Positions 9,607 to 60,757 of a DNA stretch of 64,000 nucleotides are shown in pieces. Location of the stretch: the IMG/VR virus record IMGVR_UViG_3300048121_001678, positions 124,001 to 188,000 of that record; one strand, written 5' to 3'. The notes under the pieces are model-generated. The model was not told the DNA's origin. It did not search any database and saw only the letters and a list, made by a program, of their open reading frames with translations. Numbering within the stretch: position 1 is the stretch's first letter; every line of letters begins with the position of its first letter. Position numbers and translations under genes: made by a program.

Positions 9607-9624
9607 GATAAATACTTATTTATC
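9607..9624. promoter_or_regulatory. Palindromic double copy of the late-type motif (GATAAATA-CT-TATTTATC)
   Basis: Perfect 8-bp inverted repeat; TATTTATC on the coding strand lies 13 nt before the ATG at 9593. Confidence 0.55.
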
Positions 9625-9669
9625 CGTTTTACAATGATAAACCCATAAGTAAGTTTTGTAAAACGTATA

Positions 9670-11508
9670 TTACTTGTAGTCCACGTTTTTAAGGTTTTTA
9701 ACCCTAACTTTGATATCTTTTTCTGGAAACCTAACTTGATAAATTTGAGATGGTTCTGCAAATATTGTCTCATCAATTAACGCAATTTCTCTTGTTTTTG
9801 GGTCAGAATATCTTTGAGAGGTTTCAGAAGAGGAGTATTGACCACCTACCTTATTAAAAACTTTTAAATCGGTCACAGATATCACACCCGCAACATCTTG
9901 TATGTTTTTCTTAACCTCAGATATAAACACGTTCTCACCCATCGTACTATTAATTGGTGACATGATACTTGTTACCTCATCAATTATTTTTGTGATTACA
10001 TTACCTTGGTTTTGACCCGAATCAATAACAACAGAAATATCGTACTCTAAATCAATCACTAAACCAACATTTACAGATATATAATCATTTATCATTCTAT
10101 ATTTTGAAAGGTAGTTAGCAATATTTTGTTTTAATGTATTAGACACTGTCTGTGTTAAACTTCCATTTGAATCGTATGATAAAACATTAATATTAATTTT
10201 ATTATCTTTTTCAGTGATTGCTGTTTTAGCAGGTGCACCGTATTTTCCTGGCATTTTTCTAATTAATGCATTATAATCATTAATTGTAACGGCCCTATTT
10301 TGAGAAGCATAATTAAATGTTACCATATTTCTAACCTCTTCAATAGATGGTTGGTTAGCACCACCAATAGCAGCAGTGACATTGTTAACCGTTAATGAGT
10401 TAGTTACCGTTTGATTAATAGTGTTAGAGGGACCACTCACAAAGAAGTTTACCGTACCTACTTGATTAATCGCATTAACACCAATATTCGATTGTGCACC
10501 TCCACCAACTCTATATTTAACAAATAAAGTTGTGTTAGCAGTAACTGTCCTACCTAACCCAATATTGTTTTGATATTCTTGTATTCTTAATGATACCCCG
10601 TTTCTAGCAAACTCAGCTAATTGGTCATCAGGTGTTGTTGTACCTCCACCAAACTGTACTTTCATAAAACCCTGTGGTGTATATTCTGTTATAAACCTTG
10701 TTTCGGTATCTATGTATTTACCAACCTTTAATCCCGGTAAGTCAGAAGGTTTTGTTGTGTCCTCAATGAAAACAGTACTCTCAGCCAATGAGTCCACTTC
10801 ATACCACTTATCTTGAGCATTAACAAATTCTGAATACGTTGGTGTGGATTGGAAGGATGTCCCATCTTTTTGTATGATGTCCACAACCTCTAAAACGTTT
10901 TGTTCAGGTAAGAAAAACTCGTAAAATGGTTTAACATCATTAGGGTTAACCGTTTTCTTAAAAACTTTTGTTATACCATTAACAACAACCTCTCTTTTAG
11001 TGATAGTGTAGTTTATTAATACATTGTTAGAATCAAAGTTAGGTATCTTAGTTCTATTAGGAAAACCCTCGTTGTTATATTGAGAGGCGAAATCAATGTC
11101 GTAAACATTTTCAAATACTTGACCTGCACCAATAACTTGAGAACCGGCTCTTAAGATACCTAAATATCTTGTATCTTCTTGGTCACCAGATGCTGGTACC
11201 ACAATAGAAAAATCAACAATACCTACTGAAGGTCTATTACCAGGTATTTTTAAACCGTAAGTTCTGGCGATGTTAAAAATAGATGAACGTTGTTGAGCAT
11301 ATTGTAAAACAGTTTCTTGAACACTTCTATCAATATGATAGTTTAGATTATCACCAATGGCAGCATTTAGGTCCATCAATACTGAATAAACCGCAGCGTC
11401 ATTAAAGTTATCTATCAATTCAGGATAATATTGTTTAGTGTAGTTTACTAAATCTTGTCTTAGTCCTTCAAAGTCTCTTTCTGTATATGAAATCTTTTTA
11501 CTTGCCAT
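9670..11508 (-). CDS. Baseplate wedge subunit (T4 gp6 / baseplate J-like)
   Basis: N-terminal RDFEGLRQDL...YYP..DFNDA; LNYHIDR...ETVLQYAQQRSSIFNIARTYGLK; YRVGGG; QNRAVTINDY; adjacent to the gp25-like gene. Confidence 0.85.
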   Translation of the reverse strand: MASKKISYTERDFEGLRQDLVNYTKQYYPELIDNFNDAAVYSVLMDLNAAIGDNLNYHIDRSVQETVLQYAQQRSSIFNIARTYGLKIPGNRPSVGIVDFSIVVPASGDQEDTRYLGILRAGSQVIGAGQVFENVYDIDFASQYNNEGFPNRTKIPNFDSNNVLINYTITKREVVVNGITKVFKKTVNPNDVKPFYEFFLPEQNVLEVVDIIQKDGTSFQSTPTYSEFVNAQDKWYEVDSLAESTVFIEDTTKPSDLPGLKVGKYIDTETRFITEYTPQGFMKVQFGGGTTTPDDQLAEFARNGVSLRIQEYQNNIGLGRTVTANTTLFVKYRVGGGAQSNIGVNAINQVGTVNFFVSGPSNTINQTVTNSLTVNNVTAAIGGANQPSIEEVRNMVTFNYASQNRAVTINDYNALIRKMPGKYGAPAKTAITEKDNKININVLSYDSNGSLTQTVSNTLKQNIANYLSKYRMINDYISVNVGLVIDLEYDISVVIDSGQNQGNVITKIIDEVTSIMSPINSTMGENVFISEVKKNIQDVAGVISVTDLKVFNKVGGQYSSSETSQRYSDPKTREIALIDETIFAEPSQIYQVRFPEKDIKVRVKNLKNVDYK

Positions 11509-11514
11509 ATATTA

Positions 11515-11979
11515 TTAAATATTTATAATTATGAAATCTTTAGATTGAAAAGTACTATCTGTGATTGTATAATCTATCCTTAATTTTGCTGTATACTCTT
11601 CGACACCCCTACCAGGTAATCTATATATCCCCCCAACACCTAATTTATCCATGTTTAATTCACCTTGAGACTCTAAGTCATCTAAATAAGGTGTAATTGT
11701 AATTTCATTAATTGTTAGGTTTGGTATATATTTTTCAACTGAATTTGTGATATCTGTTTTTATCCCTTCGAATGTTGTACCATCCATAGGTTCAAATATA
11801 AACTCATATATTCTAGTACCAAAGTCAGGTAAATAATACCTACTACCCTTTCTAGTTAGAATAAGATGTAACAAATCAGTCCTTATCTCCTCATCAGTTG
11901 TTTGAGAGAGTGAGACGTATTTTCCATCCCTACTATCTTGAAAAGGAAAATTAATACCATATGTTTTACCGTTTGCCAT
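11515..11979 (-). CDS. Baseplate wedge protein gp25-like
   Basis: GINFPF...LLHLILTRKGSRYYLPDFGTRIYEFIFEP is the GPW/gp25 signature. Confidence 0.9.
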   Translation of the reverse strand: MANGKTYGINFPFQDSRDGKYVSLSQTTDEEIRTDLLHLILTRKGSRYYLPDFGTRIYEFIFEPMDGTTFEGIKTDITNSVEKYIPNLTINEITITPYLDDLESQGELNMDKLGVGGIYRLPGRGVEEYTAKLRIDYTITDSTFQSKDFIIINI

Positions 11980-11983: not shown

Positions 11984-11991
11984 TATAAATA
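11984..11991 (-). promoter_or_regulatory. Putative late promoter TATTTATA
   Basis: 4 nt upstream of the gp25-like ATG; recurring motif. Confidence 0.6.
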
Positions 11992-15090: not shown

Positions 15091-16467
15091 TTAAATGTTC
15101 TCACGTTGCTTTCGCTTTTCCATGAGCTCCTTAATTCTATCCCTTTGTTTTTCTTCTTTCTGTTCTTCCAAACCTAAGAATGTCATACTTTGTTCAGTAT
15201 CAATTACCAACATTTCATTATCATACTTACAATTCTCAAACACAACACCATCTTTCCCGATACGAGACTTAGTGATTGCGATAGTTGCCAAGTTCATTTC
15301 TTTCTGTTGTAATGATTTAGCAACAGAAATGATTACGTGACCTACTTGAGCCTTCTTAATAGAACCACCCATTTGGTCTGTTGTTACAACTTCTGAAGAA
15401 ATCGATGAACGGTTACCTTGAGTTGCTGTCCATCCAACAATGTCCAATTCATGACACATCGCTTCAAACGCTCTCATTACTGAACCCTCACTCTTCCATT
15501 CATCACCTAAATTCTTATCAGGTGTAATACAATCAATATAATCTATAACTATCATATCAATCTTATTTCCTTCAGCAATCATCTTCCTAACTTGATTTTT
15601 TATCTGATTCATGGTCATCGTATCAGAAGGTAGTTTTTTCAAAGTTAAAGAGTTATTTGTGTTCTCCTTAATCTGTCTAACTTTCTCCATTACGTCATCC
15701 CTATGATTAGATAAATTATCAGGTGCAATTTCAGTCCATAGTGTGAAATGCTTACGTTGGATAATTTTCGGGTTATCCTCAAAGAAAATCTGTAACACAT
15801 TGTAACCCAAGTTAAATGCGTGATTCGACATCTTTGTTAGGAAAGTAGTTTTACCCACACCTGTTGGTGCCAATATAACACCGATTTCTCCCTTAGCTAA
15901 CCCACCTTTCATTAGATTATCAATACCTGGTACCCCCATCGGAATAGGGTGACGATAGTCATCGTCTAAAACCACATCTAAATTTGAGAACACATCTGCT
16001 GTTCCGGTATCAACTTCACCAACTTGTAACGCTTCTCTAACCATCTCTTCTAAATGGTCATACGATTCGAAATCACCCTTATCGATGATTTTCTGAGCCT
16101 TTGACATTACTTTCTGTAACTCTTGTTGTTTACAGAATTTAAGTGATTTTTCCTGTACGAAATCTGAACCTTCAATAGGTGAGTCTTTAACACTCTCTAT
16201 CATGTCAAAAACCATCTTCTGAGCCATAGGTGAACTAATTTCACTCTTCGTAAGTTGTTCCAATGTTGCAAATGTTGGAGTATGTTCGTACTTACTATAG
16301 TACTCCTTAATCATTTGCATTATGATTTTAAAATATTGATTATCAAAATACTTCGGGTCAATAACATCAACAATCGAATTGGCAAAATCCTTGTCAATAA
16401 CGATGTTGTTTATAAGTTGTATTTGAAATGAGTTACCTAAGTAACCGAAGTTTTTTTCTTTTGACAT
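15091..16467 (-). CDS. Replicative DNA helicase (DnaB / T4 gp41-like)
   Basis: Walker A APTGVGKTT, Walker B IVIDYID, WTATQGNR, KSRIG. Confidence 0.92.
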   Translation of the reverse strand: MSKEKNFGYLGNSFQIQLINNIVIDKDFANSIVDVIDPKYFDNQYFKIIMQMIKEYYSKYEHTPTFATLEQLTKSEISSPMAQKMVFDMIESVKDSPIEGSDFVQEKSLKFCKQQELQKVMSKAQKIIDKGDFESYDHLEEMVREALQVGEVDTGTADVFSNLDVVLDDDYRHPIPMGVPGIDNLMKGGLAKGEIGVILAPTGVGKTTFLTKMSNHAFNLGYNVLQIFFEDNPKIIQRKHFTLWTEIAPDNLSNHRDDVMEKVRQIKENTNNSLTLKKLPSDTMTMNQIKNQVRKMIAEGNKIDMIVIDYIDCITPDKNLGDEWKSEGSVMRAFEAMCHELDIVGWTATQGNRSSISSEVVTTDQMGGSIKKAQVGHVIISVAKSLQQKEMNLATIAITKSRIGKDGVVFENCKYDNEMLVIDTEQSMTFLGLEEQKEEKQRDRIKELMEKRKQRENI

Positions 16468-16504
16468 ATCAATTAATTTTCTTTAGGGTAAAATATAAAT
16501 ATGG

Positions 16505-19005: not shown

Positions 19006-19033
19006 GATGGTACCGATAAATATCGGTACCATC
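19006..19033. repeat. Perfect 13-bp inverted repeat (GATGGTACCGATA-AA-TATCGGTACCATC)
   Basis: Seen directly between the ssb and recA-like genes. Confidence 0.85.
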
Positions 19034-20691: not shown

Positions 20692-20916
20692 TTAACCATT
20701 AAGTAATGTCTTAACACCATGAGGTGTTTCAACCTTTAAGGTTCTATTAACTTGTCTAGTATTATCAACTCGCTCAATAAGTCCGTCTCTCATACTAACT
20801 GTATAACAATCACCTGTATCTAAGTCACAAACCTCTTTGTAACCATTTCCGGCATCTCTTTCAGTAATTCTAGTGTCTTTTGACAAATACTGGTCTAATA
20901 ATGATTTAACATTCAT
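20692..20916 (-). CDS. Small hypothetical protein (74 aa, MNVKSLLDQYL..., CDLDTGDC)
   Basis: Start moved to ATG 20916 because TATTTATA lies at 20932-20939 and the longer track ORF overlaps the upstream gene. Confidence 0.65.
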   Translation of the reverse strand: MNVKSLLDQYLSKDTRITERDAGNGYKEVCDLDTGDCYTVSMRDGLIERVDNTRQVNRTLKVETPHGVKTLLNG

Positions 20917-20959
20917 AATATTACTTTTATATATAAATATACGTTTATTATCGTTTTTC

Positions 20960-32383: not shown

Positions 32384-32428
32384 CTATTTTAGTTTACTAT
32401 ATAAATAGACGAATTACTTATTTTATAA

Positions 32429-34231: not shown

Positions 34232-34259
34232 TTAAATTACTTTTATTATAAATACCTTA

Positions 34260-35747: not shown

Positions 35748-35865
35748 TGTATTTTAATTTTAATTGTTTTTTAGTTTATTACTTATAAATAGTTGAAGTC
35801 TTAAAATTTTTTCTATTTACTTTTAATCTTAATTTTCCATAATATATAAAAATATCTAGAAAATT

Positions 35866-36919: not shown

Positions 36920-36939
36920 ATTAATATAAATATACCGAA

Positions 36940-40122: not shown

Positions 40123-40211
40123 GTTTTTTTAATTTCTTTTAGAATTTATTTTATTATAAATATTTAGAAAAAACGCAAAAAACTTTCACTGAGGGGACAT
40201 ATTTATAAATT

Positions 40212-40236
40212 AGGCAGTATTTATTCTGCCTTTTTT
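40212..40236 (+). terminator. Terminator-like hairpin AGGCAG-TATTTATT-CTGCCT-TTTTT
   Basis: 6-bp stem plus U-tract just upstream of the small RHH-like ORF. Confidence 0.5.
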
Positions 40237-40248
40237 CTACCTTTATTT

Positions 40249-40398: not shown

Positions 40399-40399
40399 A

Positions 40400-41961: not shown

Positions 41962-42010
41962 CAATTGATAAATATCTATAAAATGATTATATTTAAATGT
42001 ATTTAAGTTT

Positions 42011-43765: not shown

Positions 43766-43809
43766 TAATTTTTCCCATATGGTGTTATTTATAAATAAAA
43801 CACAGACTT

Positions 43810-45348: not shown

Positions 45349-45387
45349 TAAACGGGTAAAGCCAGATATTTATAATAAAAGTTAACG

Positions 45388-46500: not shown

Positions 46501-46832
46501 TGGGAATATTTAAATCATACCCCGTTACTAAAATAATAAATGGGGTTGAAATAAAAACTTCAGATGCAATAATATGTACTAACTCTAGTCATACCACAAA
46601 TGGGGAGTCTGCAATAATTGTTAAAAACACCGATAGTTGTGTGGTTACATTAAATGAAAATACAACAGACCACATAACAATTAAATCTATGACTAATGTT
46701 ACTATCAAAAGTGACTTACTCATTGATGATGAATATAATCAGATTGAAACTGAAAGAGGTGCGTCTGTTGAATTACGTTTCATCGGTAAAGGATGGTATA
46801 TAATGTCTTCTGATGGATTAAAAAACTCTTAA
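46500..46832 (+). CDS. Small beta-rich hypothetical protein
   Basis: Coupled to the gp13-like gene; ends GASVELRFIGKGWYIMS, similar to tail-fibre accessory modules. Confidence 0.6.
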   Translation: MGIFKSYPVTKIINGVEIKTSDAIICTNSSHTTNGESAIIVKNTDSCVVTLNENTTDHITIKSMTNVTIKSDLLIDDEYNQIETERGASVELRFIGKGWYIMSSDGLKNS

Positions 46833-49672: not shown

Positions 49673-49742
49673 AATATTTGTTTTTCGTTTGAGACATTTT
49701 ACTCACACCACAATGGCATGATTTCCCTTAACATTCAAACAA

Positions 49743-49771
49743 ATAATAGTGTATTAATAAATCTAAGTCAA
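49743..49771 (-). promoter_or_regulatory. Sigma70-like promoter TTGACT-N17-TATTAT for the DNA polymerase
   Basis: Same -35 hexamer as the ssb promoters; 70 nt upstream of the ATG. Confidence 0.65.
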
Positions 49772-49807
49772 ACTATTTGTTTTGATTCTTTTCTTGTATC
49801 CCCATAA

Positions 49808-50161
49808 TTAAATAATATTGATATATAAATTTTCTCTGATTGGGGTAATGAGTTCACCCATTGAATTAATTATCGAGAATTCACCCAAAAAACGACCTTT
49901 TCTTTTAGTGTCCCTCAATAACCACTTATAATATATGTAGTATGTGATTGGGGCGTTAGGGTTGTCTTGTGTTTTTTCAGTTATAAACGCATTGTTCATA
50001 ATAATCTTTGGAATGCCAGTCGACTCTTCTTTCATTGAAAAACGGATTGTTGCGTTGTCTAAATCAGCGTCGAACAATTTCCAAGAATCTGTTCGACCAT
50101 CTCTTACAACTTCCATCTTTAAGATTGGTAACTCACTGTTTTGTTTTATAAAGAATTCCAT
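49808..50161 (-). CDS. Small BppU-N-like adaptor domain protein
   Basis: MEFFIKQNSELPILKM...ATIRFSM...YKW...DT...G.F.GEF; paralogous to the N-terminus of 53640..58664. Confidence 0.6.
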   Translation of the reverse strand: MEFFIKQNSELPILKMEVVRDGRTDSWKLFDADLDNATIRFSMKEESTGIPKIIMNNAFITEKTQDNPNAPITYYIYYKWLLRDTKRKGRFLGEFSIINSMGELITPIRENLYINII

Positions 50162-50180
50162 AATTATAAATATATCAATA

Positions 50181-50208
50181 AAGAAAAACCCCTCCGAAGA
50201 GGGGTTTT
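50181..50208 (-). terminator. Intrinsic terminator with a cUUCGg loop
   Basis: Minus strand AAAACCCCTC-TTCG-GAGGGG-TTTTTCTTT. Confidence 0.9.
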
Positions 50209-50231
50209 ATATTTTATAGGTTTTTAATTTA

Positions 50232-53200
50232 TTATAATGCCTGTGGTACAAAGTCGTAACTAATCGTTATATTGTTGTTACCAAGTGTGAACGACCTTGA
50301 AGCATTTCCAGGATTTATTCCACTATTTGCAGAAATCGATGATACACTTTGTCCTGTTACTGATGCGACACCTTGTGTTTCTCCGTATATCTGACATCCC
50401 GAACCTAACACACCTTGAGATTCAATGTAGAATAGGATTGTATCACCAGCTACCGCTTGGATTGAATCTGTTGAATCATTTCCACTACCAGTCGCTTGGT
50501 ATGAAGATTGTAACACTCCGTTCACATAAATAGAACCTGAACCTCTAGCACATGTCGCACTTGTGAAATTGAGATTAATTGTTCTCAGTGTTACCGAGGT
50601 TGACGGTGTTGGTGTTGGTGTCTTAGTTGGTGTACGTGTTGGTGTTGCCGACCTCGTTACTGAAGGTGTTGGTGTTGGTGAAGCAGGTGCCGGAGTACCT
50701 GTTGGTGTTCTCGTTGGTGTACTCGTTGGAGTCGGTGTTGGTAGTGCACAGAATGAACAAGTGTCCCCAACGGCAGTAATTGTATACGGCGGTGGTTCAG
50801 GGCTTTCATCAATAGCCACAATCTGCCAACAACCCGTTGTCTCTTTAACAGAACAGTAATCACCGATTGACGGTACTGATGAGAAACCAGAACCTAATAA
50901 TGCACTTGCTTGTGTTCCACCTGGTTGACAATTACCGTCAACGTAATTTATTGACTGTAATATGAATTTATATTCTACACATGGATGCTCTTGTAAACAT
51001 GATGTACATCCTTCATAGAACGAACCTCCTGGTGACCATATACCCTCTTGATTCCTAAATGTTCCGTCAATTATACCTAAATCGGTTACGTCGTCACCAC
51101 CATAGCTCTGTCCAATAAACTTAACACAAGTATCAAGAATACCTGTTTGTTCTTCTAAGTATAACGACACGTCACTACTCTCTTCGAGTGCGGATAAAAT
51201 GGAACCTGTCTGACTTTGATTTAAGGATATTCTATATACTAGTGCTGGTGTATTACAACATTCTGAGAAGTACATTGGGTAATATACCGTAGATGGTGTT
51301 ACTGATGGAGTAACAGACGGAGTAACACTAGTAGATGGTGTTATCGTTGGCTGTGGAGTTTGTGTTGCCTGTGGAGTATTAGATGGTGTAACCGTTTGTG
51401 TAGGTGCCGGTGTTTGTGTTGCCTGTGCCGTTGGAGTAACTGTTGAAGTTGCCGTAGGTTCAGGTGTTGATGTCGGAGCCGGTGTACCTGTTGGTTCAGG
51501 TGTTGACGTAGGTGCCGGTGTACCTGTTGGTTCAGGTGTTGACGTAGGAGTTACACTTGAAGTTTGAGTTGGTGTATTAGTCGGTGTTTCTGTAGGTGTT
51601 GGGGTTACACTTGCAGTTGGAGTTACACTCGCTGTTGGAGTAGGACTCGATGTTGGAGTATTAGTTGGTGTATATGTTGGCGACGGTGTCACTGAACTTG
51701 TAGGGGTTACAGACGATGTCGGTGTAACCGTTGATGTCGGAGTGTTACTTGGTGTTACTGTATTAGTAGGTGTTGGTGACTGAGTAGGTGTGTTTGTCGG
51801 TGTTCTTGATAGAGAAACCGTTGGAGTCACTGTACTTGTTGAAGTAACGGTTGGAGTAACTGTCGGTGTTACTGATGACGTTACTGAAGGCGTTGGTGTT
51901 ACTGAGGCAGTTACTGTTGCGGTAACTGTAGGTGTTACGGTCGATGTAGCCGTCGGTGTGAATGTTGACGTTGGTGTTACTGTCGATTGAGGGGTAACAG
52001 AAGGTGTTACTGAAGAACTTGGAGTTACTGTAGGTGTTACCGTTGATGTGTTTGTTGGTGTAACGGAAGGTGTTACTGAAATTGTTGGTGTAACTGTAGA
52101 TGTGTTTGTTGGTGTTATTGTTTGAGTAGGGTCAGGTGTTGAACTTACTCCTGGCGTTTGAGATACTGATGCAGTTATCGATGGTGTCGGTGTAACATCT
52201 GCGGTTGGAGTCACACTCGATGTTGGTGTAACTGGTGGTGTTGAAGTTTTAGTCGGCGTTGGTGTTGAAGTAGATGTTGATACAGGTGTTGCTGTTGTTG
52301 TTGGTGTTACTGTAGATGCTGGTGTTGATGTCGGTGCAGGTGTGGATGTTGTTGTTGGCGTAGAAGTACCACCTGGTGTTGACGTAGGTTGAGGTGTAGA
52401 TGTCGGTGCCGGTGTACCTGTTGGTTCAGGTGTTGTAGTTGCCTCAGGTGTGGATGTCGGTTCAGGTGTTGTAGTTGCCTCAGGTGTTGTAGTCGCCTCA
52501 GGAGTAACTGTAGACGCTGGTGTACCTGTTGGTGTTGGAGTAGCACTTGAACCTGGTGTATTTGATACTGAAACCGTTGGTGTTACAGTTGGTGACGGAG
52601 TTGCTGTCACTGATTGTGTTGGAGTGTTTGTAGGTGTAGACTCAGGAGTCAATGTAGGTTGTGCTGTCGAAGTAGGTGTTGGAGTCGATGTACCACCTGG
52701 TGTTTGTGTAGGGTTAGGTGTTAATGTAGCTTGTGGTGTTTGACTTACACTAGCCGTAACTGATGGTGTCGGAGTTGCCGTACCACCTGGTGTTTGTGTA
52801 GGAGTATTAGTTGGTGTTGCAGTTGCCGTGTTAGACGGTGTAACTGAACTACTTGGCGTATTTGTTGGGGTAACATCAGGTGTTGATGAAATGGTAGGGG
52901 TTGGTGTTGCACTTGCACCTGGAGTATCAGATACTGAAACTGAAGGTGTCGGTGTACTTGTTGTTGTTGATGTTGGAGTAGATACCGGTGTACCCGTTGG
53001 GGTTGGCGTCCCTGTAGACTGTGGAGTACTTGTTGGAGTTGCAGTTGTTGTAGAAGTTGGTGTTGAAACAGGTGTACCTGTTGGAGTTGCCGTCGTTGTC
53101 GATGTCGGTGTTGTTGTTGGTAACGGTGTACGAGTTGGAGTAGTCGTTGTGGTTGGCTCTGGTGTTGAAGTAACAGTAGCCGTAATAGTTGCTGTTGGCG

Positions 53201-53585
53201 TTGAAGTGGATTGTGGAGTACTTGTTGGTGTTCTTGTTGGAGAAACCGTTTGAGTAATCGTTGCCGTCATCGTAGGTGTTACCGTAGATGTTATCGTTGC
53301 AGTGATAGATGGTGTTACCGATGGTGTATTTGACGGGGTAATTGTTGGGGTAACTGTCTGTGTTTGTGTTGGGGTTGGTGTTGGATGACCAATTACATAA
53401 GTGTAAGATGCTTCGTATGTTTCAGAATAGATTGTGTAGGTACCGTAAAAATAATCAGTAACTAAATCAGCCGGCATAGTAACAACACCAAAGTCCGTTA
53501 CAGTCGAACCTGTATCCGCAGTAAAAGTAATGTGAACACTTTCACCTACTAAATTATCACTCAAAAATCTAATTCCATCTGCCAT
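50232..53585 (-). CDS. Mucin-like Thr/Pro/Ser-rich surface or fibre protein with Cys-rich and C-terminal beta domains
   Basis: About 700 aa of TPT/TVTP/TSTP repeats, a Cys-rich globular region, a second TP linker and a beta-rich tip; two TATTTATA copies upstream. Confidence 0.75.
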
Positions 53586-53639
53586 TGTGTATAAATACTT
53601 TAATATATTATTTTATAAATAGTTTATCTTATGAGAATA

Positions 53640-56600
53640 TTATGGGTAAGGTGTGGTAGTATTAAAGTTGTTTAATATTTGTGACGATGTTAACGCGGTA
53701 TTGTATAATCTAATAATACCGTACTCACCCCTAAAGTCACCAGTATTATCCGCACCTGGATTCTGTTGACCAAAGAAGATGTTATTATCAACACCACTTG
53801 ATAAGTATGATACCCCCGCTTCTGAGTCATTTAACACACCATTGATGTATAAACTTTGTGTACCACTTGAGAAATCCCAAACCAATACCACCTGATACCA
53901 CTGACCTTGATTAAATGGTGATGTTGAGTAAAGATAGTTATTCTGCCAAATCTTACCTCTAAATCTACCATCTTCAGCAGCTATTGGTGGCATGTTCCAT
54001 CCCGTTTGTGGGTTTGATTCCGACATTGACATAATGTTACCATTAGTATCATCGGGATTAATCCACAATTCATAAGTGAATGATTGAGTGGCGTTACCTG
54101 TACCCGCAACATTACTTAATAATATGTAATCGTCAATACCATCTGTGACTATAGACTTATCTGTGGAGTTATATGTTGGTCCATTAACTAAAGTACCATT
54201 ATAGTTACCTTGTAAATCCGTCCATAGAGTTCCGGTACCCAGATATGAATTTGAATTTCTGGCGTCTAAATAGACTAATAAATTAGATACTATTGGAGAT
54301 GTCCCTGATGGTGTTACTGTTTGTGTTGGCGTTATTGATGGAGTAACAGAAGATGTTACAGATGGTGTTGGAGTAGATGTCACCTGTGGTGTTTGTGTAG
54401 GTGTTGGTGTAGGCGTAATACAATCATCCGCAAAATAACCTGAAACCCCACCGTGGTTATCTTGGAAAATGTTTCTTAGTGTTACAAAACTTGGTTTAGT
54501 TAAAACTGGTGCGAAATAAGAATTAAATAAGTTATAACCTAAAATATTATTTGTTTGAATACCCGATGGAGTTCTCATATTATCATTCCACTCAGGAGAT
54601 AAAGAACCTCCCGCCCAAAACTCAGACATCTCCCACATACTCCAGTTAAGTAAATACATATACTCTTTATATGCTAATTGAGCCTGTTCTGTATCACCTG
54701 ACCAATTAGGTGCGTATTCACTAGGGTCAAACATACTATTGTCAATAGCTTGTTTCATAGCCAAATGTAAGTCAGTTGTTTGCCAATTCGGATTTTGTTC
54801 CGCCATCCAGTTTACTGCGGTTGACGAACCAGGAACCGCACCCATTATACCAAACAAGTGAACCGTATGGAAAATATGTTCAAATACTTCTCCAATCACA
54901 GTATCTCCACTTGTGGAGCCACTACTGTACCACACCATGTCATTAGTTGCGTGAGTATCTAAGAATTCTTGGTATCCTGTATACCCTGTTATACCTTCAT
55001 CGGTCAACCAATTAGGGTCATAGTCGTCCCCACTACCATAACCAACTCTTTGGGCTGTAGGTATTCCCTCATGTATTGTGCCTACATCACCTCTTAAAGT
55101 GGCTACTAAATTATTTTGATATGACAAAGTAATCCCTGTTGCTGATGGGTCCATTATTAATTGGAATGAACGGGCAACTTTTTTAGAGAATTCATCAGGT
55201 ACAGCAACATTACCACCAACCGCACCGGCTATAACTTCTAACATACCACTAACATTTATACTTCTATCGAATACTGCCCCATTACTGGTATCGGCAGTTA
55301 AAGGTCCTGCGACATAACAACTAAGAAGAGATGCTGCGGATGGGGTCGGTGTTGGAGTTACAGATGCTGTTGGTGTATATGTCGGAGTTGTTGTTGGTGT
55401 AGGTGTATTAGATGCAGTAACTGTAGGTGTTGGTGTTACGTATGGTAAAGGTGATAATGAATATCTCTGTCTGTATTGGTCATAGAATGATGTGATATCT
55501 GAATCAGATATTGCACTATCATATAATGCAACAATACCCATATCTCCATCAAAGAAGTCATCAGCAGCCCAGTTACTATCACCAATGTAATTATTATTTC
55601 TTGTAATTACGTTTGGTAACACACTTGTTAAACCAGATACCGAAGTCGTTTGATTAAACATCGTGTATGTTGAACCGTCAAGACGACCCACATAGAATCC
55701 CCAACCATTGTTTGTTATACCATTAGTAATTGTTTGTGTGAATGCTTGAGTGGCCCCTTGTCTAATCTCAAACCATAGATTATTAGTAGAGCCATTCCTA
55801 CCAAATATGATATTATCACTCTCATCTCCATTACCAAAGTCTATTATTCTCTCCCAATTAGATACCCCATTGAAATTAACAAAGGCTAATATTGTAATAC
55901 CATTACTAAAGTTGTCAAAGCCTGAAGGTACTTCACCATATTGAGATGTTCCGTCAAATGTTACAATACCACCATTAGATGATGACACTGTTGGAGAATT
56001 ATATAATGTGGCATCGTTTCCACCACCACTTGTATCTGTCCATGTTGATGATGTTGCATTCGCACCATCAAGTAATAATATTGGTGAACCTACAACCGAT
56101 GTAGGTGATGGTGTTGGTGTCAATGTAGGAGTTGGAGTGGCTGAATTAGCAAATGGTGTTGCGGTGAAGTCCATTGTCGGTGCTGGTGTATCAGTTGGAG
56201 TAACTGATTGAGTGACCGTAGGTGTTACCGTTGACTCAGGAGTGACTGAAGGAGTTACAGATTGTGTCAATGTTGGAGTTACCGTCGATGTCTTAGTGAC
56301 CGTAGGTGTGTTTGTCGGTGTATTAGATGGTGTTAATGTTTGAGTAACAGAAGCGGTTACTGTTTGTGTTGGGGTGTTTGTATTTGTTACAGTCGGAGTA
56401 ACAGTAGAGGTAACTGACGGAGTTACTGTATTTGTTGGAGTACTCGTTGGTGTTACACCCGGTGTTTCAGATGCGGTTACTGTTTGTGTTGGGGTGTTTG
56501 TATTGGTGACAGTTGGTGTTACTGTTGATGTCACTGACGGAGTTACTGTATTTGTTGGTGTGTTAGAAGGGGTTAATGTTTGAGTAACCGAAGGACTTAC

Positions 56601-58664
56601 TGTCTGTGTTGGCGTATTTGTTGGAGTAACCGTAGGTGTACTTGTTGAAGATGATGTTGGTGTTATGGTGTTTGTTGGTGTGATACTTGCAGTCACCGTT
56701 GGTGTAACCGTACTCGTAGGTGTCGATGTAGGACTTGATGGTGGAGTTACCGAAACTGAAATACTTGGGGTATTTGTTGGTGTGTGTGTTGGAGTAACTG
56801 TAGAAGTGACAGTCGGTGTTACTGACGAAGTAACCGATGGTGTTAATGTTGCAGTCGCAGATGGTGAAACCGTTTGAGTCGGAGTGTTTGTGTTCGTTAC
56901 TGTTGGTGTTACCGTTGAAGTAACCGAAGGTGTTACTGATTGTGTTGGTGTATTTGTTGGTGTCAATGAAGGCGTAACAGATGCCGTTACCGTTTGAGTC
57001 GGAGTATTAGTTGCCGTCACTGTTGGTGTAACAGATGAGGTAACCGAAGGAGTAACCGTCTGAGTTGGGGTGTTTGTCGGTGTTAATGTTGGGGTAATTG
57101 ATGCCGTAACTGTTTGAGTAGGTGTATTTGTGTTCGTCACTGTTGGTGTTACTGACGAAGTGACTGATGGCGTTAAACTTGGACTCACTGAAACCGAAGG
57201 TGTGATACTTACAGAAACCGTGGGTGTTGGAGTATTAGTTGCGGTTTTAGATATCGTAATTGTGGGGTTAGGTGTGTTAGTGGTAGAAGGTGTAACTGTC
57301 GGTAACGGAGTCGTCGATACAGAAGGTGTTAACGTATTTGTTGGCGTGGGCGTCGAAGACCCGATAGGTGTTGCGGTAACATCTGAAGTTGGTATAGGTG
57401 TAGATGTCATAGTAGGTGTTGCAGTACCAATAGGTGTTGCGGTAATATCAAAAGTGGGTATCGGAGTATCCGTAGGGTTTGGTGTATTTGTTGGTGTTGG
57501 GGTAACATCTATAGTTGGAGTAACTGTCGGTGTTGATGTATGACTAATACTTGGTGTGTTTGTTGGAGTTAATGTATTACTAACAATAGGTGTGTCAGTA
57601 GGGTTTGGTGTATTTGTTGCCGTTGGGGTAACATCTATAGTCGATGTAGGTGTAACAGTTGGGCTTTTACTAATAGTTGGTGTGTTTGTTGGAGTTAATG
57701 TATTACTAACAATAGGTGTGTCAGTAGGGTTTGGTGTATTTGTTGCCGTTGGGGTAACATCTATAGTTGGAGTAACTGTCGGTGTTGATGTATGACTAAT
57801 ACTTGGTGTCTGAGTAAGACTAACAGAAATGGAAGGTGTTACACCAATTGTTTTTGTAACTGTTGGTGTTGATGTGATTTGTAAAGTGGATGTGGGTGTG
57901 ATTGATGTTGTCGGAGTTACCGTTGGTGTTGGTGAAGGTGTAGATGTTGGTGTCGGAGTAATCGTAGTATCAAAGTTAGACTTTGGCTCAACCACAAACC
58001 TATATTTACCTGAAGAACTTATATTGTCAACTTTAATATCTTCATAGTAACTTTCACCAGTAATTAAATTATAATTGTATGGGCTTATAATTTTATATGT
58101 GGCATTTTTCTCACCCTTATTTATGGTTAATTTAACTTCATTAACTATTTGACGACCATCAACCATTAAAAGTACATTTTTAAAGGTGATATTCACTTCA
58201 GTATCCACAGGGTATGTTGCGTTGGCTGCGTAGTCAGAAATTACAGAGCCACTACTGTGTGTGTCAGTAAGTGATATTTGATTTGATATCTTATTTCTAC
58301 GACAACACATTTCAGAGTCGGCAAATGATTCCGCAACCGTAATAAATAAACTACTCTCTATCGGTACTCGGTATACTCCCCTTTCATTAGTTATTGTGAA
58401 AAAACCATTGTAACTACCGTTTTTATTAGTATTCTTTTTAGAGAATTGATAAGACAAGATGTAACCTGAATCATCTTTATTTGGTAATACTTGTGCTTTT
58501 GAATTTGCAATCTTATAAATACCTGTTTCGACATCCTGCATTGAAAAGGTAACAGTGGATGCATAGATAAGTGGGTCAAGTTGGTTGTAACCATTTCTTG
58601 ATTCATTTAGAACCTCAACTTGTAGTTTAGGTAACGTACTATTCTTTTTTATAAAAAACTCCAC
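53640..58664 (-). CDS. Mucin-like fibre protein: BppU-like anchor, Thr/Pro stalk, LamG domain, zincin-like domain, second LamG domain
   Basis: LLLDGAN...WTDTSGGGNDATL...FDGTSQY...WERIIDFGNG and LLVYLDARN...WTDL...TYELWINP...WYQVVLVWD...LYING are LamG/ConA-like; EVFEHIFHTVH...KEYMY lies between them. Confidence 0.75.
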   Translation of the reverse strand: MEFFIKKNSTLPKLQVEVLNESRNGYNQLDPLIYASTVTFSMQDVETGIYKIANSKAQVLPNKDDSGYILSYQFSKKNTNKNGSYNGFFTITNERGVYRVPIESSLFITVAESFADSEMCCRRNKISNQISLTDTHSSGSVISDYAANATYPVDTEVNITFKNVLLMVDGRQIVNEVKLTINKGEKNATYKIISPYNYNLITGESYYEDIKVDNISSSGKYRFVVEPKSNFDTTITPTPTSTPSPTPTVTPTTSITPTSTLQITSTPTVTKTIGVTPSISVSLTQTPSISHTSTPTVTPTIDVTPTATNTPNPTDTPIVSNTLTPTNTPTISKSPTVTPTSTIDVTPTATNTPNPTDTPIVSNTLTPTNTPSISHTSTPTVTPTIDVTPTPTNTPNPTDTPIPTFDITATPIGTATPTMTSTPIPTSDVTATPIGSSTPTPTNTLTPSVSTTPLPTVTPSTTNTPNPTITISKTATNTPTPTVSVSITPSVSVSPSLTPSVTSSVTPTVTNTNTPTQTVTASITPTLTPTNTPTQTVTPSVTSSVTPTVTATNTPTQTVTASVTPSLTPTNTPTQSVTPSVTSTVTPTVTNTNTPTQTVSPSATATLTPSVTSSVTPTVTSTVTPTHTPTNTPSISVSVTPPSSPTSTPTSTVTPTVTASITPTNTITPTSSSTSTPTVTPTNTPTQTVSPSVTQTLTPSNTPTNTVTPSVTSTVTPTVTNTNTPTQTVTASETPGVTPTSTPTNTVTPSVTSTVTPTVTNTNTPTQTVTASVTQTLTPSNTPTNTPTVTKTSTVTPTLTQSVTPSVTPESTVTPTVTQSVTPTDTPAPTMDFTATPFANSATPTPTLTPTPSPTSVVGSPILLLDGANATSSTWTDTSGGGNDATLYNSPTVSSSNGGIVTFDGTSQYGEVPSGFDNFSNGITILAFVNFNGVSNWERIIDFGNGDESDNIIFGRNGSTNNLWFEIRQGATQAFTQTITNGITNNGWGFYVGRLDGSTYTMFNQTTSVSGLTSVLPNVITRNNNYIGDSNWAADDFFDGDMGIVALYDSAISDSDITSFYDQYRQRYSLSPLPYVTPTPTVTASNTPTPTTTPTYTPTASVTPTPTPSAASLLSCYVAGPLTADTSNGAVFDRSINVSGMLEVIAGAVGGNVAVPDEFSKKVARSFQLIMDPSATGITLSYQNNLVATLRGDVGTIHEGIPTAQRVGYGSGDDYDPNWLTDEGITGYTGYQEFLDTHATNDMVWYSSGSTSGDTVIGEVFEHIFHTVHLFGIMGAVPGSSTAVNWMAEQNPNWQTTDLHLAMKQAIDNSMFDPSEYAPNWSGDTEQAQLAYKEYMYLLNWSMWEMSEFWAGGSLSPEWNDNMRTPSGIQTNNILGYNLFNSYFAPVLTKPSFVTLRNIFQDNHGGVSGYFADDCITPTPTPTQTPQVTSTPTPSVTSSVTPSITPTQTVTPSGTSPIVSNLLVYLDARNSNSYLGTGTLWTDLQGNYNGTLVNGPTYNSTDKSIVTDGIDDYILLSNVAGTGNATQSFTYELWINPDDTNGNIMSMSESNPQTGWNMPPIAAEDGRFRGKIWQNNYLYSTSPFNQGQWYQVVLVWDFSSGTQSLYINGVLNDSEAGVSYLSSGVDNNIFFGQQNPGADNTGDFRGEYGIIRLYNTALTSSQILNNFNTTTPYP
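57472..57809. repeat. Near-exact 126-bp tandem repeat (about 2.7 copies, 42 aa unit)
   Basis: About 90 nt starting ttggtgtgtttgttggagttaatg are identical at 57551 and 57677; the block at about 57472 recurs 252 nt later. Confidence 0.85.
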
Positions 58665-58683
58665 AGACTATAAATACATTTAA

Positions 58684-60717
58684 TTAATCATTAACTTCAA
58701 TACCAACATCACAGTTAGGATTGGAAACACTGAATCCTACACCACAATCAGTATCTACAACATCAAAACCAAATGCACAACCTTCATCGACAACATCAAA
58801 ACCAAAATTACATGACACATCATTCATAATGAAATCAAAATCACAAGCATTCAAATCAATGTTAAAATCGAAGAAACACTCCGATAATATTTCTAAACAA
58901 TTAGGACACCAAAAATCAAATAAATTATATGTGTCTCTTTCAACTCTAAAATTATGTTGTACCTGTGGTGAATTTAATGGTTCTGTGTAAAATCTCATTT
59001 TAGAAATCCCACCCATAAAAGTCCCACCAAAATTAGGTTCCATCTCAATATTAGTGACAAGTATTGGCTCATATGTTGTACCTGAAATCATTTCATTTGG
59101 CATACATTCAGGGTCTTGTATATATGGTCCGTTTATGTTAGTACAAGATGTTGGTATTAAACTCTCTCTTAAACCTTGTGTACCACCACCCCATGAAATC
59201 GTATATGGTACACCTATTTGTTTTTCTTTCTCAGTGTTTAATTCATGTGGTATAATTTCTTCAAAATCTTCAATAACCATAAACAAATATCCGTTTACGT
59301 ATAATTTTAAAGAACCACGCCTATCACTTACCTCATCCAACCATTTTTGAGTCCATTTAATGTTACCAACTTTTTCATCGTTAGCACCACTTGGACCTAT
59401 TAGTTTAACAGTGTCACCTGCAGTAGATGCCGTATATGTTTCGGTACGGATATCCCCTAATCCACCGACATTTAATAAATCACAATTTTCTAAGTACCTA
59501 TATCTTTCAAAAACGGCAGATAACATAACCCACCTTTCTTTAGTTTTTTCAGACTCGTTAATCGGGTATCCACAAACATCGTATATACCTGATGTCGAAC
59601 ATATCTCATTAATACAATACCCTGATGAGTATGTTGTCCCTGTATTTTCACATGTTCCTGTTGTAATACAACTACCAGTATATTTTATATATTTGACACA
59701 TAATTTAGGATTTTTTGGGTCACCACTTAATCGTAGTGAAACGGCATTTGATAATAAATCAAGTACGGGGTCAGACTCCTTATTAGGGTATATGGTGATA
59801 TTACCACAAGTTTTAAAACAACTAACTAATCCGGCGGTAACCCTTTTATAGTCTTCGACAGATGCACTACTAATCACTTCATTTGAACCACAGATAAACA
59901 AACCATTGTAAATTACAGGTATACCTGTGGCTTTATGGTAAAATTTATTTTCAGAGCGTGTACCAAGAAAAAAGAATGTACCAGAATTACCTGAATAAAC
60001 ATCATTAAGATATTCTTGACTATCACTTAATTCATATTCATCGTACTGTCGGGGTTTGATAAGTGTTTCCATTGACCATCCTTTGTTTACTCTCTCAGGA
60101 AAAATTTCATAGTCATAACCATGTAATTTATAAAATCCTTGAAAGAATCCACCATATAATTCTTGGTAGTAACCTACAGAACTATCTATTTTGTTAACAA
60201 TATTATAAACAGTTTCTTTTGTTTTACCCGTAAATCTTTGGTTTGGGTTTTTGGCAAATGTATTTACAGGGTGTAATTTCATTCTCCTATCGTGATATAG
60301 TGGGTCGTGAGTTTTACTTGGAAAAACACCCATAGAATAATATAATGTATTACCCGATATCTTATCAAACATACCTACATCAATCATTGTAAGACCTACA
60401 TCACAAATACCAGTGAATCCTGTATAACAAGATAAATCGACATTATTAGGGTTATAATAATTTAAAGATGTAAAAGTGTTCGCTGTATTTGCAACATTCC
60501 AGTAAAGGTTTGGTTTCGTAGTTGTACCCGATTGAGTTAAATCAAAATTAATTGGTAAACGATTACCATCATCATATGCAATGACTTTATCTGAAAAAAC
60601 AACTTCGCTGTCGTAGTCGCTCTCATCAGATGCCAAAGTAATATCAAAATACTCACTGGTATCCAACTTAACCTTAAATCTTTTGGAGTTATAACTATTA
60701 ATACTCTGACCTGCCAT
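58684..60717 (-). CDS. Cys-rich LamG-like structural protein with C-terminal 11-aa Cys repeats
   Basis: GWSMETLIKP, LKLYVNG, GGISKMRFYTEPL...VQHNF are dispersed LamG-like strands; C-terminal C-x-[FV]-x-[FI]-x-[VIM] repeats. Confidence 0.6.
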   Translation of the reverse strand: MAGQSINSYNSKRFKVKLDTSEYFDITLASDESDYDSEVVFSDKVIAYDDGNRLPINFDLTQSGTTTKPNLYWNVANTANTFTSLNYYNPNNVDLSCYTGFTGICDVGLTMIDVGMFDKISGNTLYYSMGVFPSKTHDPLYHDRRMKLHPVNTFAKNPNQRFTGKTKETVYNIVNKIDSSVGYYQELYGGFFQGFYKLHGYDYEIFPERVNKGWSMETLIKPRQYDEYELSDSQEYLNDVYSGNSGTFFFLGTRSENKFYHKATGIPVIYNGLFICGSNEVISSASVEDYKRVTAGLVSCFKTCGNITIYPNKESDPVLDLLSNAVSLRLSGDPKNPKLCVKYIKYTGSCITTGTCENTGTTYSSGYCINEICSTSGIYDVCGYPINESEKTKERWVMLSAVFERYRYLENCDLLNVGGLGDIRTETYTASTAGDTVKLIGPSGANDEKVGNIKWTQKWLDEVSDRRGSLKLYVNGYLFMVIEDFEEIIPHELNTEKEKQIGVPYTISWGGGTQGLRESLIPTSCTNINGPYIQDPECMPNEMISGTTYEPILVTNIEMEPNFGGTFMGGISKMRFYTEPLNSPQVQHNFRVERDTYNLFDFWCPNCLEILSECFFDFNIDLNACDFDFIMNDVSCNFGFDVVDEGCAFGFDVVDTDCGVGFSVSNPNCDVGIEVND

Positions 60718-60729
60718 TCCCTTTTTTAA

Positions 60730-60757
60730 GATAAATACTTTCTTTGTTGTATTTATA
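60730..60757. promoter_or_regulatory. Back-to-back divergent late-type motifs (TATTTATC minus, TATTTATA plus)
   Basis: One copy faces each of the divergent genes starting at 60717(-) and 60765(+). Confidence 0.7.

What the first reader, a model, noticed from the sequence alone, without database searches (positions are those of the whole stretch)
9607..60757. Genome-wide TATTTAT(A/C) motif: a T4 late promoter in reverse orientation
Seen on the coding strand shortly before gene starts at 9607, 11984, 16494, 20932, 32400, 34247, 35784, 36925, 40155, 40200(+), 41967, 43786(+), 45367(+), 50165, 53590 and 53614, 58669, 60730 and 60750(+). It flips with gene orientation, mostly precedes structural genes, and is absent before pol and ssb. 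Known: the T4 gp55 late promoter is TATAAATA, the exact reverse complement of TATTTATA. Several copies are only 3-5 nt from the start codon and Shine-Dalgarno sequences are generally not evident. Inference: a clade-specific late promoter read by a phage sigma factor, often giving leaderless or near-leaderless mRNAs.
Basis: partly seen in the sequence, partly recalled or inferred. Interest (0 to 1): 0.7.

Follow-up and report, generated by a model that had tools for sequence, protein, structure and literature searches.

The report
Phage-specific TATTTAT promoter box
A 297-kb marine phage of a Flavobacterium-type host puts an almost invariant TATTTAT(A) box a few bases before about a quarter of its genes, mainly virion genes. 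The box is most likely a promoter read with a phage-encoded sigma-like protein, and it often leaves little or no mRNA leader.

Summary
All 19 listed sites exist. TATTTATA is the most enriched 8-mer upstream of genes in the whole 297-kb genome: 49 sense copies against 2.5 expected, and 36 sense against 4 antisense between same-strand genes.

It behaves like a promoter box:
- It is kept upstream of the tail-sheath gene in 41 distinct relatives.
- It is enriched in Flavobacterium phage immuto and in Microcystis phage Mel-JY01. In Mel-JY01 it sits about 33 nt before the ATG, ahead of Shine-Dalgarno sites.
- It follows terminators.
- Metatranscriptome contigs start just downstream of it at the sheath gene and the capsid operon.

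The phage has no RNA polymerase of its own. It encodes a divergent 251-aa sigma-like protein with weak similarity to T4 gp55, and immuto and Mel-JY01 share this protein.

The distance from box to ATG is bimodal, 3-5 nt or 12-19 nt. The 3-5 nt spacing is conserved in relatives, which supports leaderless mRNAs.

The "reversed T4 promoter" framing is not needed. Read in the same direction, TATTTATA and T4's TATAAATA agree at 6 of 8 positions, and the box also agrees with the Bacteroidota -7 box at 6 of 8. "Late" is mostly right, but a DnaB-RNR operon also carries the box.

No transcription start site has been mapped at nucleotide resolution.

The parts
9607..9614 (-). TATTTATC box, 13 nt before the ATG of the 1736-aa gene 4383-9593
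11984..11991 (-). TATTTATA box, 4 nt before the ATG of the gp25-like baseplate wedge gene 11515-11979 (the gp6-like wedge gene 9670-11508 follows). A terminator hairpin lies 23 nt upstream. Leaderless candidate.
16494..16501 (-). TATTTATA box, 26 nt before the DnaB-like helicase gene 15091-16467, which is followed by the RNR genes. This is the non-structural exception.
20932..20939 (-). TATTTATA box, 15 nt before an in-frame ATG at 20916 (74-aa ORF 20692-20916)
32400..32407 (-). TATTTATA box, 16 nt before the 1545-aa gene 27746-32383
34247..34254 (-). TATTTATA box, 15 nt before the 600-aa gene 32429-34231
35784..35791 (-). TATTTATA box, 36 nt before the tail tube gene 35259-35747
36925..36932 (-). 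TATTTATA box between the sheath stop codon (36940) and a conserved hairpin (36896-36920), 64 nt before the 47-aa ORF 36717-36860. In relatives the box lies before the hairpin, after it, or is absent. Its function here is uncertain.
40155..40162 (-). TATTTATA box, 32 nt before the tail sheath gene 36940-40122. TATTTAT is invariant in 41 distinct relatives. RNA contigs reach 40134 and none covers 40137-40333.
40200..40207 (+). TATTTATA copy with no ORF downstream, followed after 4 nt by the hairpin 40212-40231. Probably not a gene promoter.
41967..41974 (-). TATTTATC box, 5 nt before the 171-aa gene 41446-41961. The spacing stays at 3-5 nt in about 35 distinct relatives while the spacer letters change. 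Best leaderless candidate.
43786..43793 (+). TATTTATA box, 16 nt before the 512-aa gene 43810-45348 that carries an Fe/Mn-SOD domain
45367..45374 (+). TATTTATA box, 13 nt before the 370-aa gene 45388-46500 (weak head-tail adaptor match)
50165..50172 (-). TATTTATA box, 3 nt before the 117-aa gene 49808-50161 and 12 nt after the terminator hairpin 50185-50208. Leaderless candidate.
53590..53597 (-). TATTTATA box, 4 nt before the 1117-aa gene 50232-53585. Proximal box of a tandem pair.
53614..53621 (-). TATTTATA box, 28 nt before the same gene. Distal box of the tandem pair.
58669..58676 (-). TATTTATA box, 4 nt before the GTG that opens the 1674-aa frame 53640-58664 (Laminin_G_3 virion protein). 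The first ATG is 127 nt downstream, so the start codon is uncertain.
60730..60737 (-). TATTTATC box, 12 nt before the 677-aa gene 58684-60717. One arm of a divergent pair.
60750..60757 (+). TATTTATA box, 7 nt before the 234-aa gene 60765-61469. The other arm of the divergent pair.
49740..49772 (-). Contrast case. Upstream of polB (46829-49672) there is no TATTTAT, but TTTG-N20-TATTATTTG, close to the Bacteroidota host-type -33/-7 promoter.

Best explanation
TATTTAT(A>T>C) is the core '-10/-7' box of a phage-specific promoter class.

Proposed mechanism:
- The phage has no RNA polymerase of its own, so the host core enzyme must be used.
- A phage-encoded divergent sigma-like protein (251 aa, genome 200184-200939, outside the window) is the likely specificity factor.
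- The box occupies about -12 to -5 and needs no conserved -33/-35 element.
- Transcription starts at an A about 4-6 nt after the box.

Consequences for the mRNAs:
- The host (Bacteroidota) does not use Shine-Dalgarno pairing.
- Most leaders are therefore only about 8-15 nt long.
- About a fifth of the boxes place the start codon at the predicted start site, giving leaderless mRNAs.

Gene classes:
- The box drives mainly virion genes, a late or middle-to-late class.
- A separate set of genes carries host-type TTTG/TAnnTTTG promoters, an early class.

Shown: enrichment, orientation, invariance, conservation, spacing pattern, the two promoter classes, the presence of the sigma-like gene, and RNA coverage starting near the box.

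Inferred: the exact TSS, the timing, and which protein reads the box.
For: Enrichment and strand bias.

Conservation:
- TATTTAT is invariant upstream of the sheath gene in 41 distinct relatives with 63-98% protein identity, while the flanks drift.
- ATATTTAT and TATTTATA are the top upstream 8-mers (35-fold and 29-fold) in 64 distant loci.
- The box is enriched 18.6-fold in cultured Flavobacterium phage immuto.
- It is enriched 7-fold (12 sense, 1 antisense) in Microcystis phage Mel-JY01.

Promoter rather than a translation signal:
- In Mel-JY01, which uses Shine-Dalgarno sites, the box lies about 33-40 nt before the ATG.
- 13 of 87 boxes follow a terminator-like hairpin.
- Divergent gaps carry one box per arm.

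RNA coverage:
- Sheath contigs span 36914-40134 and none covers 40137-40333.
- Over the capsid operon the depth is 50-1400. It is 0-18 upstream of the box and the furthest listed contig ends 34 nt downstream of it.

Start-site geometry:
- A is 68%, 77% and 65% at the 4th, 5th and 6th nt after the box in leadered sites.
- F. johnsoniae TSSs lie 4-5 nt after its -7 box at -12..-5 (PMC6847099).

Leaderless design:
- Box-to-ATG distance is 3-4 nt in 15 sites, never 8-10 nt, and 12-19 nt in 45 sites.
- Relatives show the same pattern, and the 171-aa gene keeps 3-5 nt.

The reader protein:
- No phage RNAP was found.
- The 251-aa protein hits the T4 late-sigma family (phrog_234, E 3e-4), SigA region 2 (E 1e-3) and T4 gp55 chain 7d7c_F (E 0.086).
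- hhalign against a gp55 family profile gives 84.5% probability and E 7e-6.
- The AlphaFold model has pLDDT 91.5, and its 50 best PDB matches, as far as their titles tell, are sigma factors or RNA-polymerase complexes that contain one.
- The protein is shared by the window genome, immuto and Mel-JY01, whereas the second, canonical sigma gene is not.

Functional split:
- Box-bearing genes include sheath, tube, baseplate, portal, prohead protease and the capsid operon.
- Genes with host-type promoters encode proteases and a methyltransferase, and polB has a near-match to the host type. These promoters cluster at 220-280 kb.
Against: - No 5'-end mapping was possible. The RNA evidence is assembled metatranscriptome contigs, which stop 16-34 nt short of the predicted start, carry no strand information and may contain some DNA.
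- All sigma similarities are weak: E 1e-3 to 1e-5, and Foldseek E 0.03 or worse with TM about 0.25-0.3.
- No T4-type clamp gp45 was found and no gp33 was identified.
- The box also precedes a DnaB-RNR operon and many small genes, so 'late' is not clean.
- A more distant phage with a 22%-identical sigma-like gene shows no enrichment of the box.
- One short-distance case would need a GTG start (window 58664).
- Gene starts came from a simple ORF caller of my own.
Confidence: 0.7

Rival explanations
1. The box is a variant of the host -7 element that the host primary sigma reads directly. A phage activator or a change in sigma competition would help, and no phage sigma would be involved.
For: - TATTTATA matches the Flavobacterium consensus TAHHTTTG at 6 of 8 positions in the same register (PMC6847099).
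- Host-type promoters occur in this genome.
- The sigma-like assignment is weak.
Against: - The two differing positions (A for T at -7 and A for G at -5) are nearly invariant in host promoters and equally invariant, with other letters, in the phage box.
- The same box is used by a relative that infects a cyanobacterium, whose sigma reads TATAAT-type boxes.
- A sigma-like gene co-occurs with the box in all three genomes.
Confidence: 0.12
2. The box is the operator of a phage DNA-binding regulator (activator or repressor) placed next to gene starts, and is not the core promoter element itself.
For: - The 7-8 bp word is strictly invariant and lies in front of many genes.
- No TSS data exist to fix its position relative to +1.
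Against: - No other conserved promoter element lies between the terminators and the ATG at sites such as 50165 and 11984. Only about 23-35 nt are available there, and the box fills them.
- An A-rich patch lies at a fixed 4-6 nt after the box.
- The box-to-ATG spacing has the gap expected from a TSS constraint.
Confidence: 0.1
3. The box acts in the mRNA. It could be an AU-rich translation enhancer for a host without Shine-Dalgarno sites, or an RNA processing or stability site.
For: - It lies close to start codons in a host that lacks Shine-Dalgarno pairing.
- Its orientation follows the gene.
Against: - It precedes only about a quarter of the genes.
- In Mel-JY01 it is about 33 nt upstream of the ATG and ahead of the GGAG sites.
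- It occurs in divergent gaps and just after terminators.
- The listed RNA contigs stop before reaching it at the sheath gene and the capsid operon.
- With 3-5 nt to the ATG there is no room for a ribosome-binding leader.
Confidence: 0.06
4. It is a compositional artefact of AT-rich intergenic DNA.
For: - Intergenic DNA is 29% GC.
- Many A/T-rich 8-mers are somewhat enriched upstream of genes.
Against: - About 50 sense copies are observed against about 9 per strand, even under an order-3 Markov model trained on the intergenic DNA itself.
- There is a 9:1 strand bias.
- One-letter variants are at background.
- The box is conserved in relatives.
- It is not enriched in LR756508.1.
Confidence: 0.01

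Closest known systems
Phage T4 late promoters (TATAAATA) read by gp55 with gp33 and the gp45 clamp
   Same: - A single, nearly invariant 8-bp A/T box about one helical turn before the start site.
- No conserved -35 element.
- It stands in front of virion genes of a large myovirus with T4-like sheath, baseplate, portal, protease and gp23-like capsid genes.
- The host core polymerase is redirected by a small, divergent sigma-like protein with detectable gp55 similarity.
- The boxes agree at 6 of 8 positions in the same direction.
   Different: - The central two bases are TT, not AA.
- The candidate sigma is longer (251 against 185 aa) and matches cellular sigma region 2 at least as well as it matches gp55.
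- No gp45-type clamp or gp33 was found.
- The box also precedes a helicase-RNR operon.
- Leaders are far shorter than in T4, or absent.
Bacteroidota housekeeping promoters (-33 TTTG / -7 TAnnTTTG, sigma-ABfr)
   Same: - The same slot, about -12 to -5, with the start site 4-5 nt downstream.
- T-12, A-11, T-8 and T-6 are shared.
- AT-rich DNA lies upstream.
- The phage also carries true host-type promoters on another gene set.
   Different: - A at -7 and A at -5 replace the near-invariant T and G.
- There is no TTTG at -33.
- The box is also used in a cyanophage relative.
- Leaders are 0-15 nt, against a host mean of 33 nt.
Phage-encoded alternative sigma cascades (e.g. Bacillus phage SPO1 gp28, gp33/34)
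   Same: Temporal classes are defined by phage sigma factors that give host core polymerase a new promoter specificity. This statement rests on my own knowledge and was not tested here.
   Different: SPO1 promoters are bipartite (-35 and -10), and the sigma families and motifs are unrelated.

Membership tests
T4-type late transcription system | Promoter box TATAAATA centred near -10 on the non-template strand | tested here: not met
   The box is TATTTATA. TATAAATA is not enriched in the sense direction between same-strand genes: 6 copies, about what composition predicts.
T4-type late transcription system | No -35 element required | tested here: met
   No conserved word lies upstream of the box in 52-87 sites, only a T-rich tract 14-20 nt upstream.
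T4-type late transcription system | gp55-family sigma-like protein | tested here: inconclusive
   - phrog_234: E 3e-4 and 8e-3.
- PDB gp55 chain 7d7c_F: E 0.086, against SigA at 1e-3.
- hhalign against a gp55 profile: 84.5% probability, E 7e-6, 116 columns.
- The fold matches sigma factors in general.
T4-type late transcription system | gp45 sliding clamp as mobile activator | tested here: not met
   phrog_223 gave no match at E <= 1 in the whole genome. A clamp of another family was not searched for.
T4-type late transcription system | gp33 co-activator | not tested
   No gp33 profile was run. A conserved 116-131-aa gene follows the sigma-like gene in three phages, but its role is unknown and the complex prediction gave no answer.
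T4-type late transcription system | Late timing coupled to replication | not testable with these tools
   This needs a time course of infection.
Sigma-70 superfamily (the 251-aa protein) | Region 2 (core-binding and -10 recognition helices) | tested here: inconclusive
   - Pfam Sigma70_r2: 15-17 bits, below the 24-bit cut-off.
- Profile against PDB SigA region 2: E 1e-3.
- The Foldseek top 50 matches, as far as their titles tell, are sigma factors or RNA-polymerase complexes that contain one, but with E >= 0.03.
Bacteroidota host-type promoter (TTTG / TAHHTTTG) | T at -7 and G at -5, nearly invariant | tested here: not met
   The box has A at both positions. TATTTTTA, TATTTATG and similar variants are at background. 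The host consensus is from PMC6847099.
Leaderless mRNA | Start codon at or within a few nt of the transcript 5' end | tested here: inconclusive
   - Spacing peaks at 3-4 nt, with none at 8-10 nt.
- Spacing is conserved at 3-5 nt in relatives.
- A terminator lies 12-23 nt before the box at two sites.
- No 5' ends were mapped.

The most novel reading that the evidence does not exclude
A large, very abundant group of aquatic myoviruses carries a portable late-transcription module. The group includes hosts as far apart as Flavobacteriia and Microcystis, and the sigma-like protein has more than 1,200 clusters at 50% identity.

The module would consist of a gp55-related but longer sigma, possibly a small partner protein, and a TATTTAT box that differs from T4's only in its central dinucleotide.

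In the Bacteroidota-infecting members the box is set so close to the ATG that roughly a fifth of these genes would be expressed as true leaderless mRNAs. That mode is rare in the host.
Probability: 0.4. Interest if true: 0.7.

Novelty: new variant of a known kind. Interest (0 to 1): 0.55.

Why it matters
- It gives a ready rule for finding transcription units and the probable late genes in a widespread but barely studied group of marine and freshwater large phages. Most of their genes have no annotation.
- It offers a natural specificity series: host TAHHTTTG, phage TATTTATA and T4 TATAAATA. This could show how sigma region 2-like proteins read the -10 strand.
- It suggests that phages of hosts without Shine-Dalgarno pairing compress or drop mRNA leaders. 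This can be tested in the cultured immuto/Flavobacterium pair.
- The box with its sigma could serve as an orthogonal expression switch in Bacteroidota, where standard promoters do not work.

Tried and rejected
The T7-like control rang nowhere, so that absence is weaker.
- A third, canonical TTGACA/TATAAT promoter class for replication genes, suggested by the polB hit TTGACT-17-TATTAT: counts were 3 against 3.5 expected and 24 against 29 expected, so it was rejected.
- De novo k-mer search in the 74 intergenic regions that lack both promoter types: no further strong word.
- Binding of the sigma-like protein to the neighbouring 125-aa protein: the complex prediction gave no answer and is not evidence either way.
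- RNA runs for the leaderless candidates at 49.7-55.6 kb: the only run found is of unstated library type, so no RNA run was confirmed and this could not be tested.
- Literature: no paper in the searchable library links TATTTATA to a phage promoter, and no promoter work exists on immuto or Mel-JY01.
- Rfam and tRNA scans of the window: nothing found.

Full report
**Context**

The window is bases 124001-188000 of a single 297,164-bp virus record with 34% GC. Its DNA is held by seawater metagenomes and marine or estuarine metatranscriptomes.

It is a large myovirus with T4-like morphogenesis and replication genes:
- Tail sheath, gp6-like and gp25-like baseplate wedge, baseplate hub and tail tube.
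- Portal, prohead protease and a gp23-like capsid protein outside the window.
- DnaB-like helicase, RNR, UvsX-like recombinase, gp32-like SSB, an exonuclease and a family-B DNA polymerase.

The nearest named relatives are Flavobacterium phage vB_FspM_immuto, Microcystis phage Mel-JY01 and an uncultured 484-kb phage.

Three things point to a Bacteroidota (Flavobacteriia-like) host:
- The immuto relationship.
- Shine-Dalgarno-like tetramers before only 6 of 313 genes.
- Textbook Bacteroidota promoters, TTTG-N19-21-TA(H)(H)TTTG and mostly TATATTTG, before a subset of genes (consensus as in PMC6847099).

**The observation**

Every coordinate in the finding is an exact match.

Enrichment:
- In the window, 30 matches to TATTTATM against 18.7 in shuffles.
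- Genome-wide, TATTTATA is the most frequent upstream 8-mer: 49 sense copies in the 60 nt before genes against 2.5 expected.
- 61 of 91 copies are outside coding sequence, although only 7% of the genome is non-coding.

Orientation follows the gene:
- 36 sense against 4 antisense in gaps between same-strand minus genes.
- 14 copies in divergent gaps and 1 in convergent gaps.
- 14 against 13 inside genes.

The word is almost invariant. Only the eighth base varies (A 49, T 20, C 9), and all other one-letter variants are near background. Of 165 upstream gaps of 25 nt or more, 74 carry TATTTAT, 19 carry a host-type -7 box and 74 carry neither. No further strong word emerges in that last set.

**It is conserved, and conserved as a promoter would be**

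- Upstream of the tail-sheath gene, TATTTAT is invariant in all 41 distinct relatives (63-98% sheath identity), while the eighth base and the flanks vary.
- Across 64 of the more distant loci, ATATTTAT and TATTTATA are the top upstream 8-mers, at 35-fold and 29-fold.
- In immuto the same 8-mer is 18.6-fold enriched.
- In Mel-JY01 it is 7-fold enriched, with 12 sense and 1 antisense copies.

Mel-JY01 infects a cyanobacterium and does use GGAG-type ribosome sites. There the box lies mostly 30-40 nt before the ATG, upstream of those sites. This argues strongly that the box is a DNA-level promoter element rather than a translation signal. The very short distances in the Bacteroidota phages would then reflect their hosts' mode of initiation.

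As a negative control, the first 260 kb of the 484-kb phage LR756508.1 shows no enrichment.

**Geometry**

In leadered sites the 4th, 5th and 6th bases after the box are A in 68%, 77% and 65% of cases, against about 45% nearby.

In F. johnsoniae the -7 box spans -12 to -5 and the TSS lies 4-5 nt after it (PMC6847099). Placing TATTTATA in that slot puts +1 on the conserved A.

The box-to-ATG distance is bimodal: 15 sites at 3-4 nt, none at 8-10 nt and 45 at 12-19 nt. Immuto shows the same gap, while Mel-JY01 has no short class.

In the relatives the histogram is again 3-5 nt (47 sites), almost nothing at 6-12 nt, then 13-16 nt. For the 171-aa gene at window 41446-41961 the spacer letters change (aattg, aatat, aata, aat, aagg) but its length stays at 3-5 nt in about 35 distinct relatives.

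At window 50165 and 11984 a strong terminator hairpin ends 12 and 23 nt before the box, and the ATG follows 3-4 nt after it. No other promoter could fit there. Together this supports leaderless mRNAs for about a fifth of the boxes and 8-15-nt leaders for most others. The F. johnsoniae mean leader is 33 nt.

**RNA evidence**

This evidence is limited. Only assembled contigs of metatranscriptomes were available.
- Over the sheath gene, contigs span 36914-40134, and none covers 40137-40333. The ATG is at 40122 and the box at 40155-40162.
- Over the capsid operon, summed depth is 50-1400 from the capsid gene up to 34 nt downstream of the box. It is 0-18 upstream of the box in four runs (L106 3807-3814 is the box).
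- This places a strong promoter within about 100 nt around the box in both cases, but does not give the TSS.

**Who reads it**

No multisubunit or T7-like RNA polymerase was found. Two sigma-like genes exist.

The first (274 aa, genome 67714-68538, minus strand) is a canonical sigma-70 protein with regions 1.2, 2 and 4. It has no counterpart in immuto or Mel-JY01.

The second (251 aa, genome 200184-200939) is the better candidate:
- It is the only genomic hit to the T4 late-sigma family (E 3e-4).
- A 58-sequence profile of it hits SigA region 2 (E 1e-3) and T4 gp55 (E 0.086) among PDB sequences.
- It aligns to a gp55 family profile with 84.5% probability and E 7e-6.
- Its AlphaFold model (pLDDT 91.5) finds, as far as the entry titles tell, only sigma factors or RNA-polymerase complexes that contain one among the 50 best PDB matches, though with weak scores.
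- Its family is very large: 1,204 clusters at 50% identity.
- It is present in all three genomes that use the box.
- In all three it is followed by a homologous gene of 116-131 aa that is itself preceded by TATTTAT. A complex prediction for that pair gave no answer.

**Comparison with T4 and with the host**

The outer triplets TAT and ATA are each other's complement, so in the same direction the two boxes differ only in the central dinucleotide (TT against AA) and agree at 6 of 8 positions.

The box also matches the host TAHHTTTG at 6 of 8 positions. It differs at -7 and -5, the positions that are near-invariant in the host.

No inversion of the transcription direction is needed. The strand statistics, the divergent pairs and the RNA coverage all put the gene downstream of TATTTATA as written.

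**Temporal class**

Box-bearing genes with a known function are overwhelmingly virion genes: sheath, tube, baseplate wedge, portal, prohead protease, the capsid operon and a Laminin_G_3 virion protein.

Genes with host-type promoters encode an FtsH-like protease, a peptidase, a DNA methyltransferase and a ClpP-like protease, and these promoters cluster at 220-280 kb. The polB upstream region carries only a near-match to the host type.

PolB, SSB, UvsX and the exonuclease lack the box. However, the DnaB-RNR operon has one (window 16494), and many small genes at both genome ends do too. "Late" is therefore probable but may be "middle plus late".

**Verdict**

This is a real, strongly supported, clade-wide promoter-like box with a plausible phage sigma and a conserved leaderless or near-leaderless design. 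In kind it is a variant of the T4 late-promoter/gp55 theme, adapted to hosts with a different promoter grammar. I found no description of it in the searchable literature.

Noticed in passing
window 36860-36940 (hairpin 36896-36920), and the same place in loci L012-L091: Just after the sheath stop codon lies a hairpin kept by compensatory changes in relatives. It is followed by the conserved words TTAGCC and TTAAACGTTTAAA, and then by a conserved 47-aa ORF that begins MEFKK. This could be a shared terminator and 5'-UTR regulatory element.
   Followed up: partly
genome 67714-68538, minus strand (L003:1081-1905), outside the window: A second, canonical sigma-70 family gene of 274 aa with regions 1.2, 2 and 4. 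No region 1.1 match was reported. It is absent from immuto and Mel-JY01. Its promoter class is unknown.
   Followed up: partly
genome 200967-201344 (L002:2095-2472), outside the window: A conserved small gene (125 aa here, 116 aa in immuto, 131 aa in Mel-JY01) directly follows the sigma-like gene. It is preceded by TATTTAT in all three phages. It could be a partner of the sigma, but the complex prediction was uninformative.
   Followed up: partly
window 43810-45348 (+): A 512-aa protein with complete Fe/Mn superoxide dismutase N- and C-terminal domains in residues 39-228, fused to about 280 further residues. It is expressed from a TATTTATA box.
   Followed up: no
window 48000-60000: GC rises to 0.38-0.41, against 0.32-0.35 elsewhere, and the GC skew flips sign. 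This stretch is largely occupied by two giant minus-strand genes (1117 and 1674 aa) that share phrog_15511 repeats. One of them ends in a Laminin_G_3 domain.
   Followed up: no
window 53590-53621 (-): Two TATTTATA boxes 24 nt apart stand before one gene. They would give one leaderless transcript and one with a leader of about 24 nt.
   Followed up: no
window 46829-49672 (-): This phage uses a family-B DNA polymerase, whereas its relative immuto has family-A enzymes. This fits the polymerase swapping reported for that group (PMC11348598).
   Followed up: no
window 19008-19029 (-): The TATTTATC copy at 19015 sits in the loop region of a perfect inverted repeat, GGTACCGATATTTATCGGTACC, upstream of the UvsX-like gene. 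It is probably a hairpin and not a promoter box.
   Followed up: no
whole genome and protein databases: The sigma-like protein family is very abundant in aquatic metagenomes. More than 8,000 90%-identity clusters were scored, and some lie on contigs of up to about 310 kb. This phage group is therefore common and mostly uncultured.
   Followed up: partly
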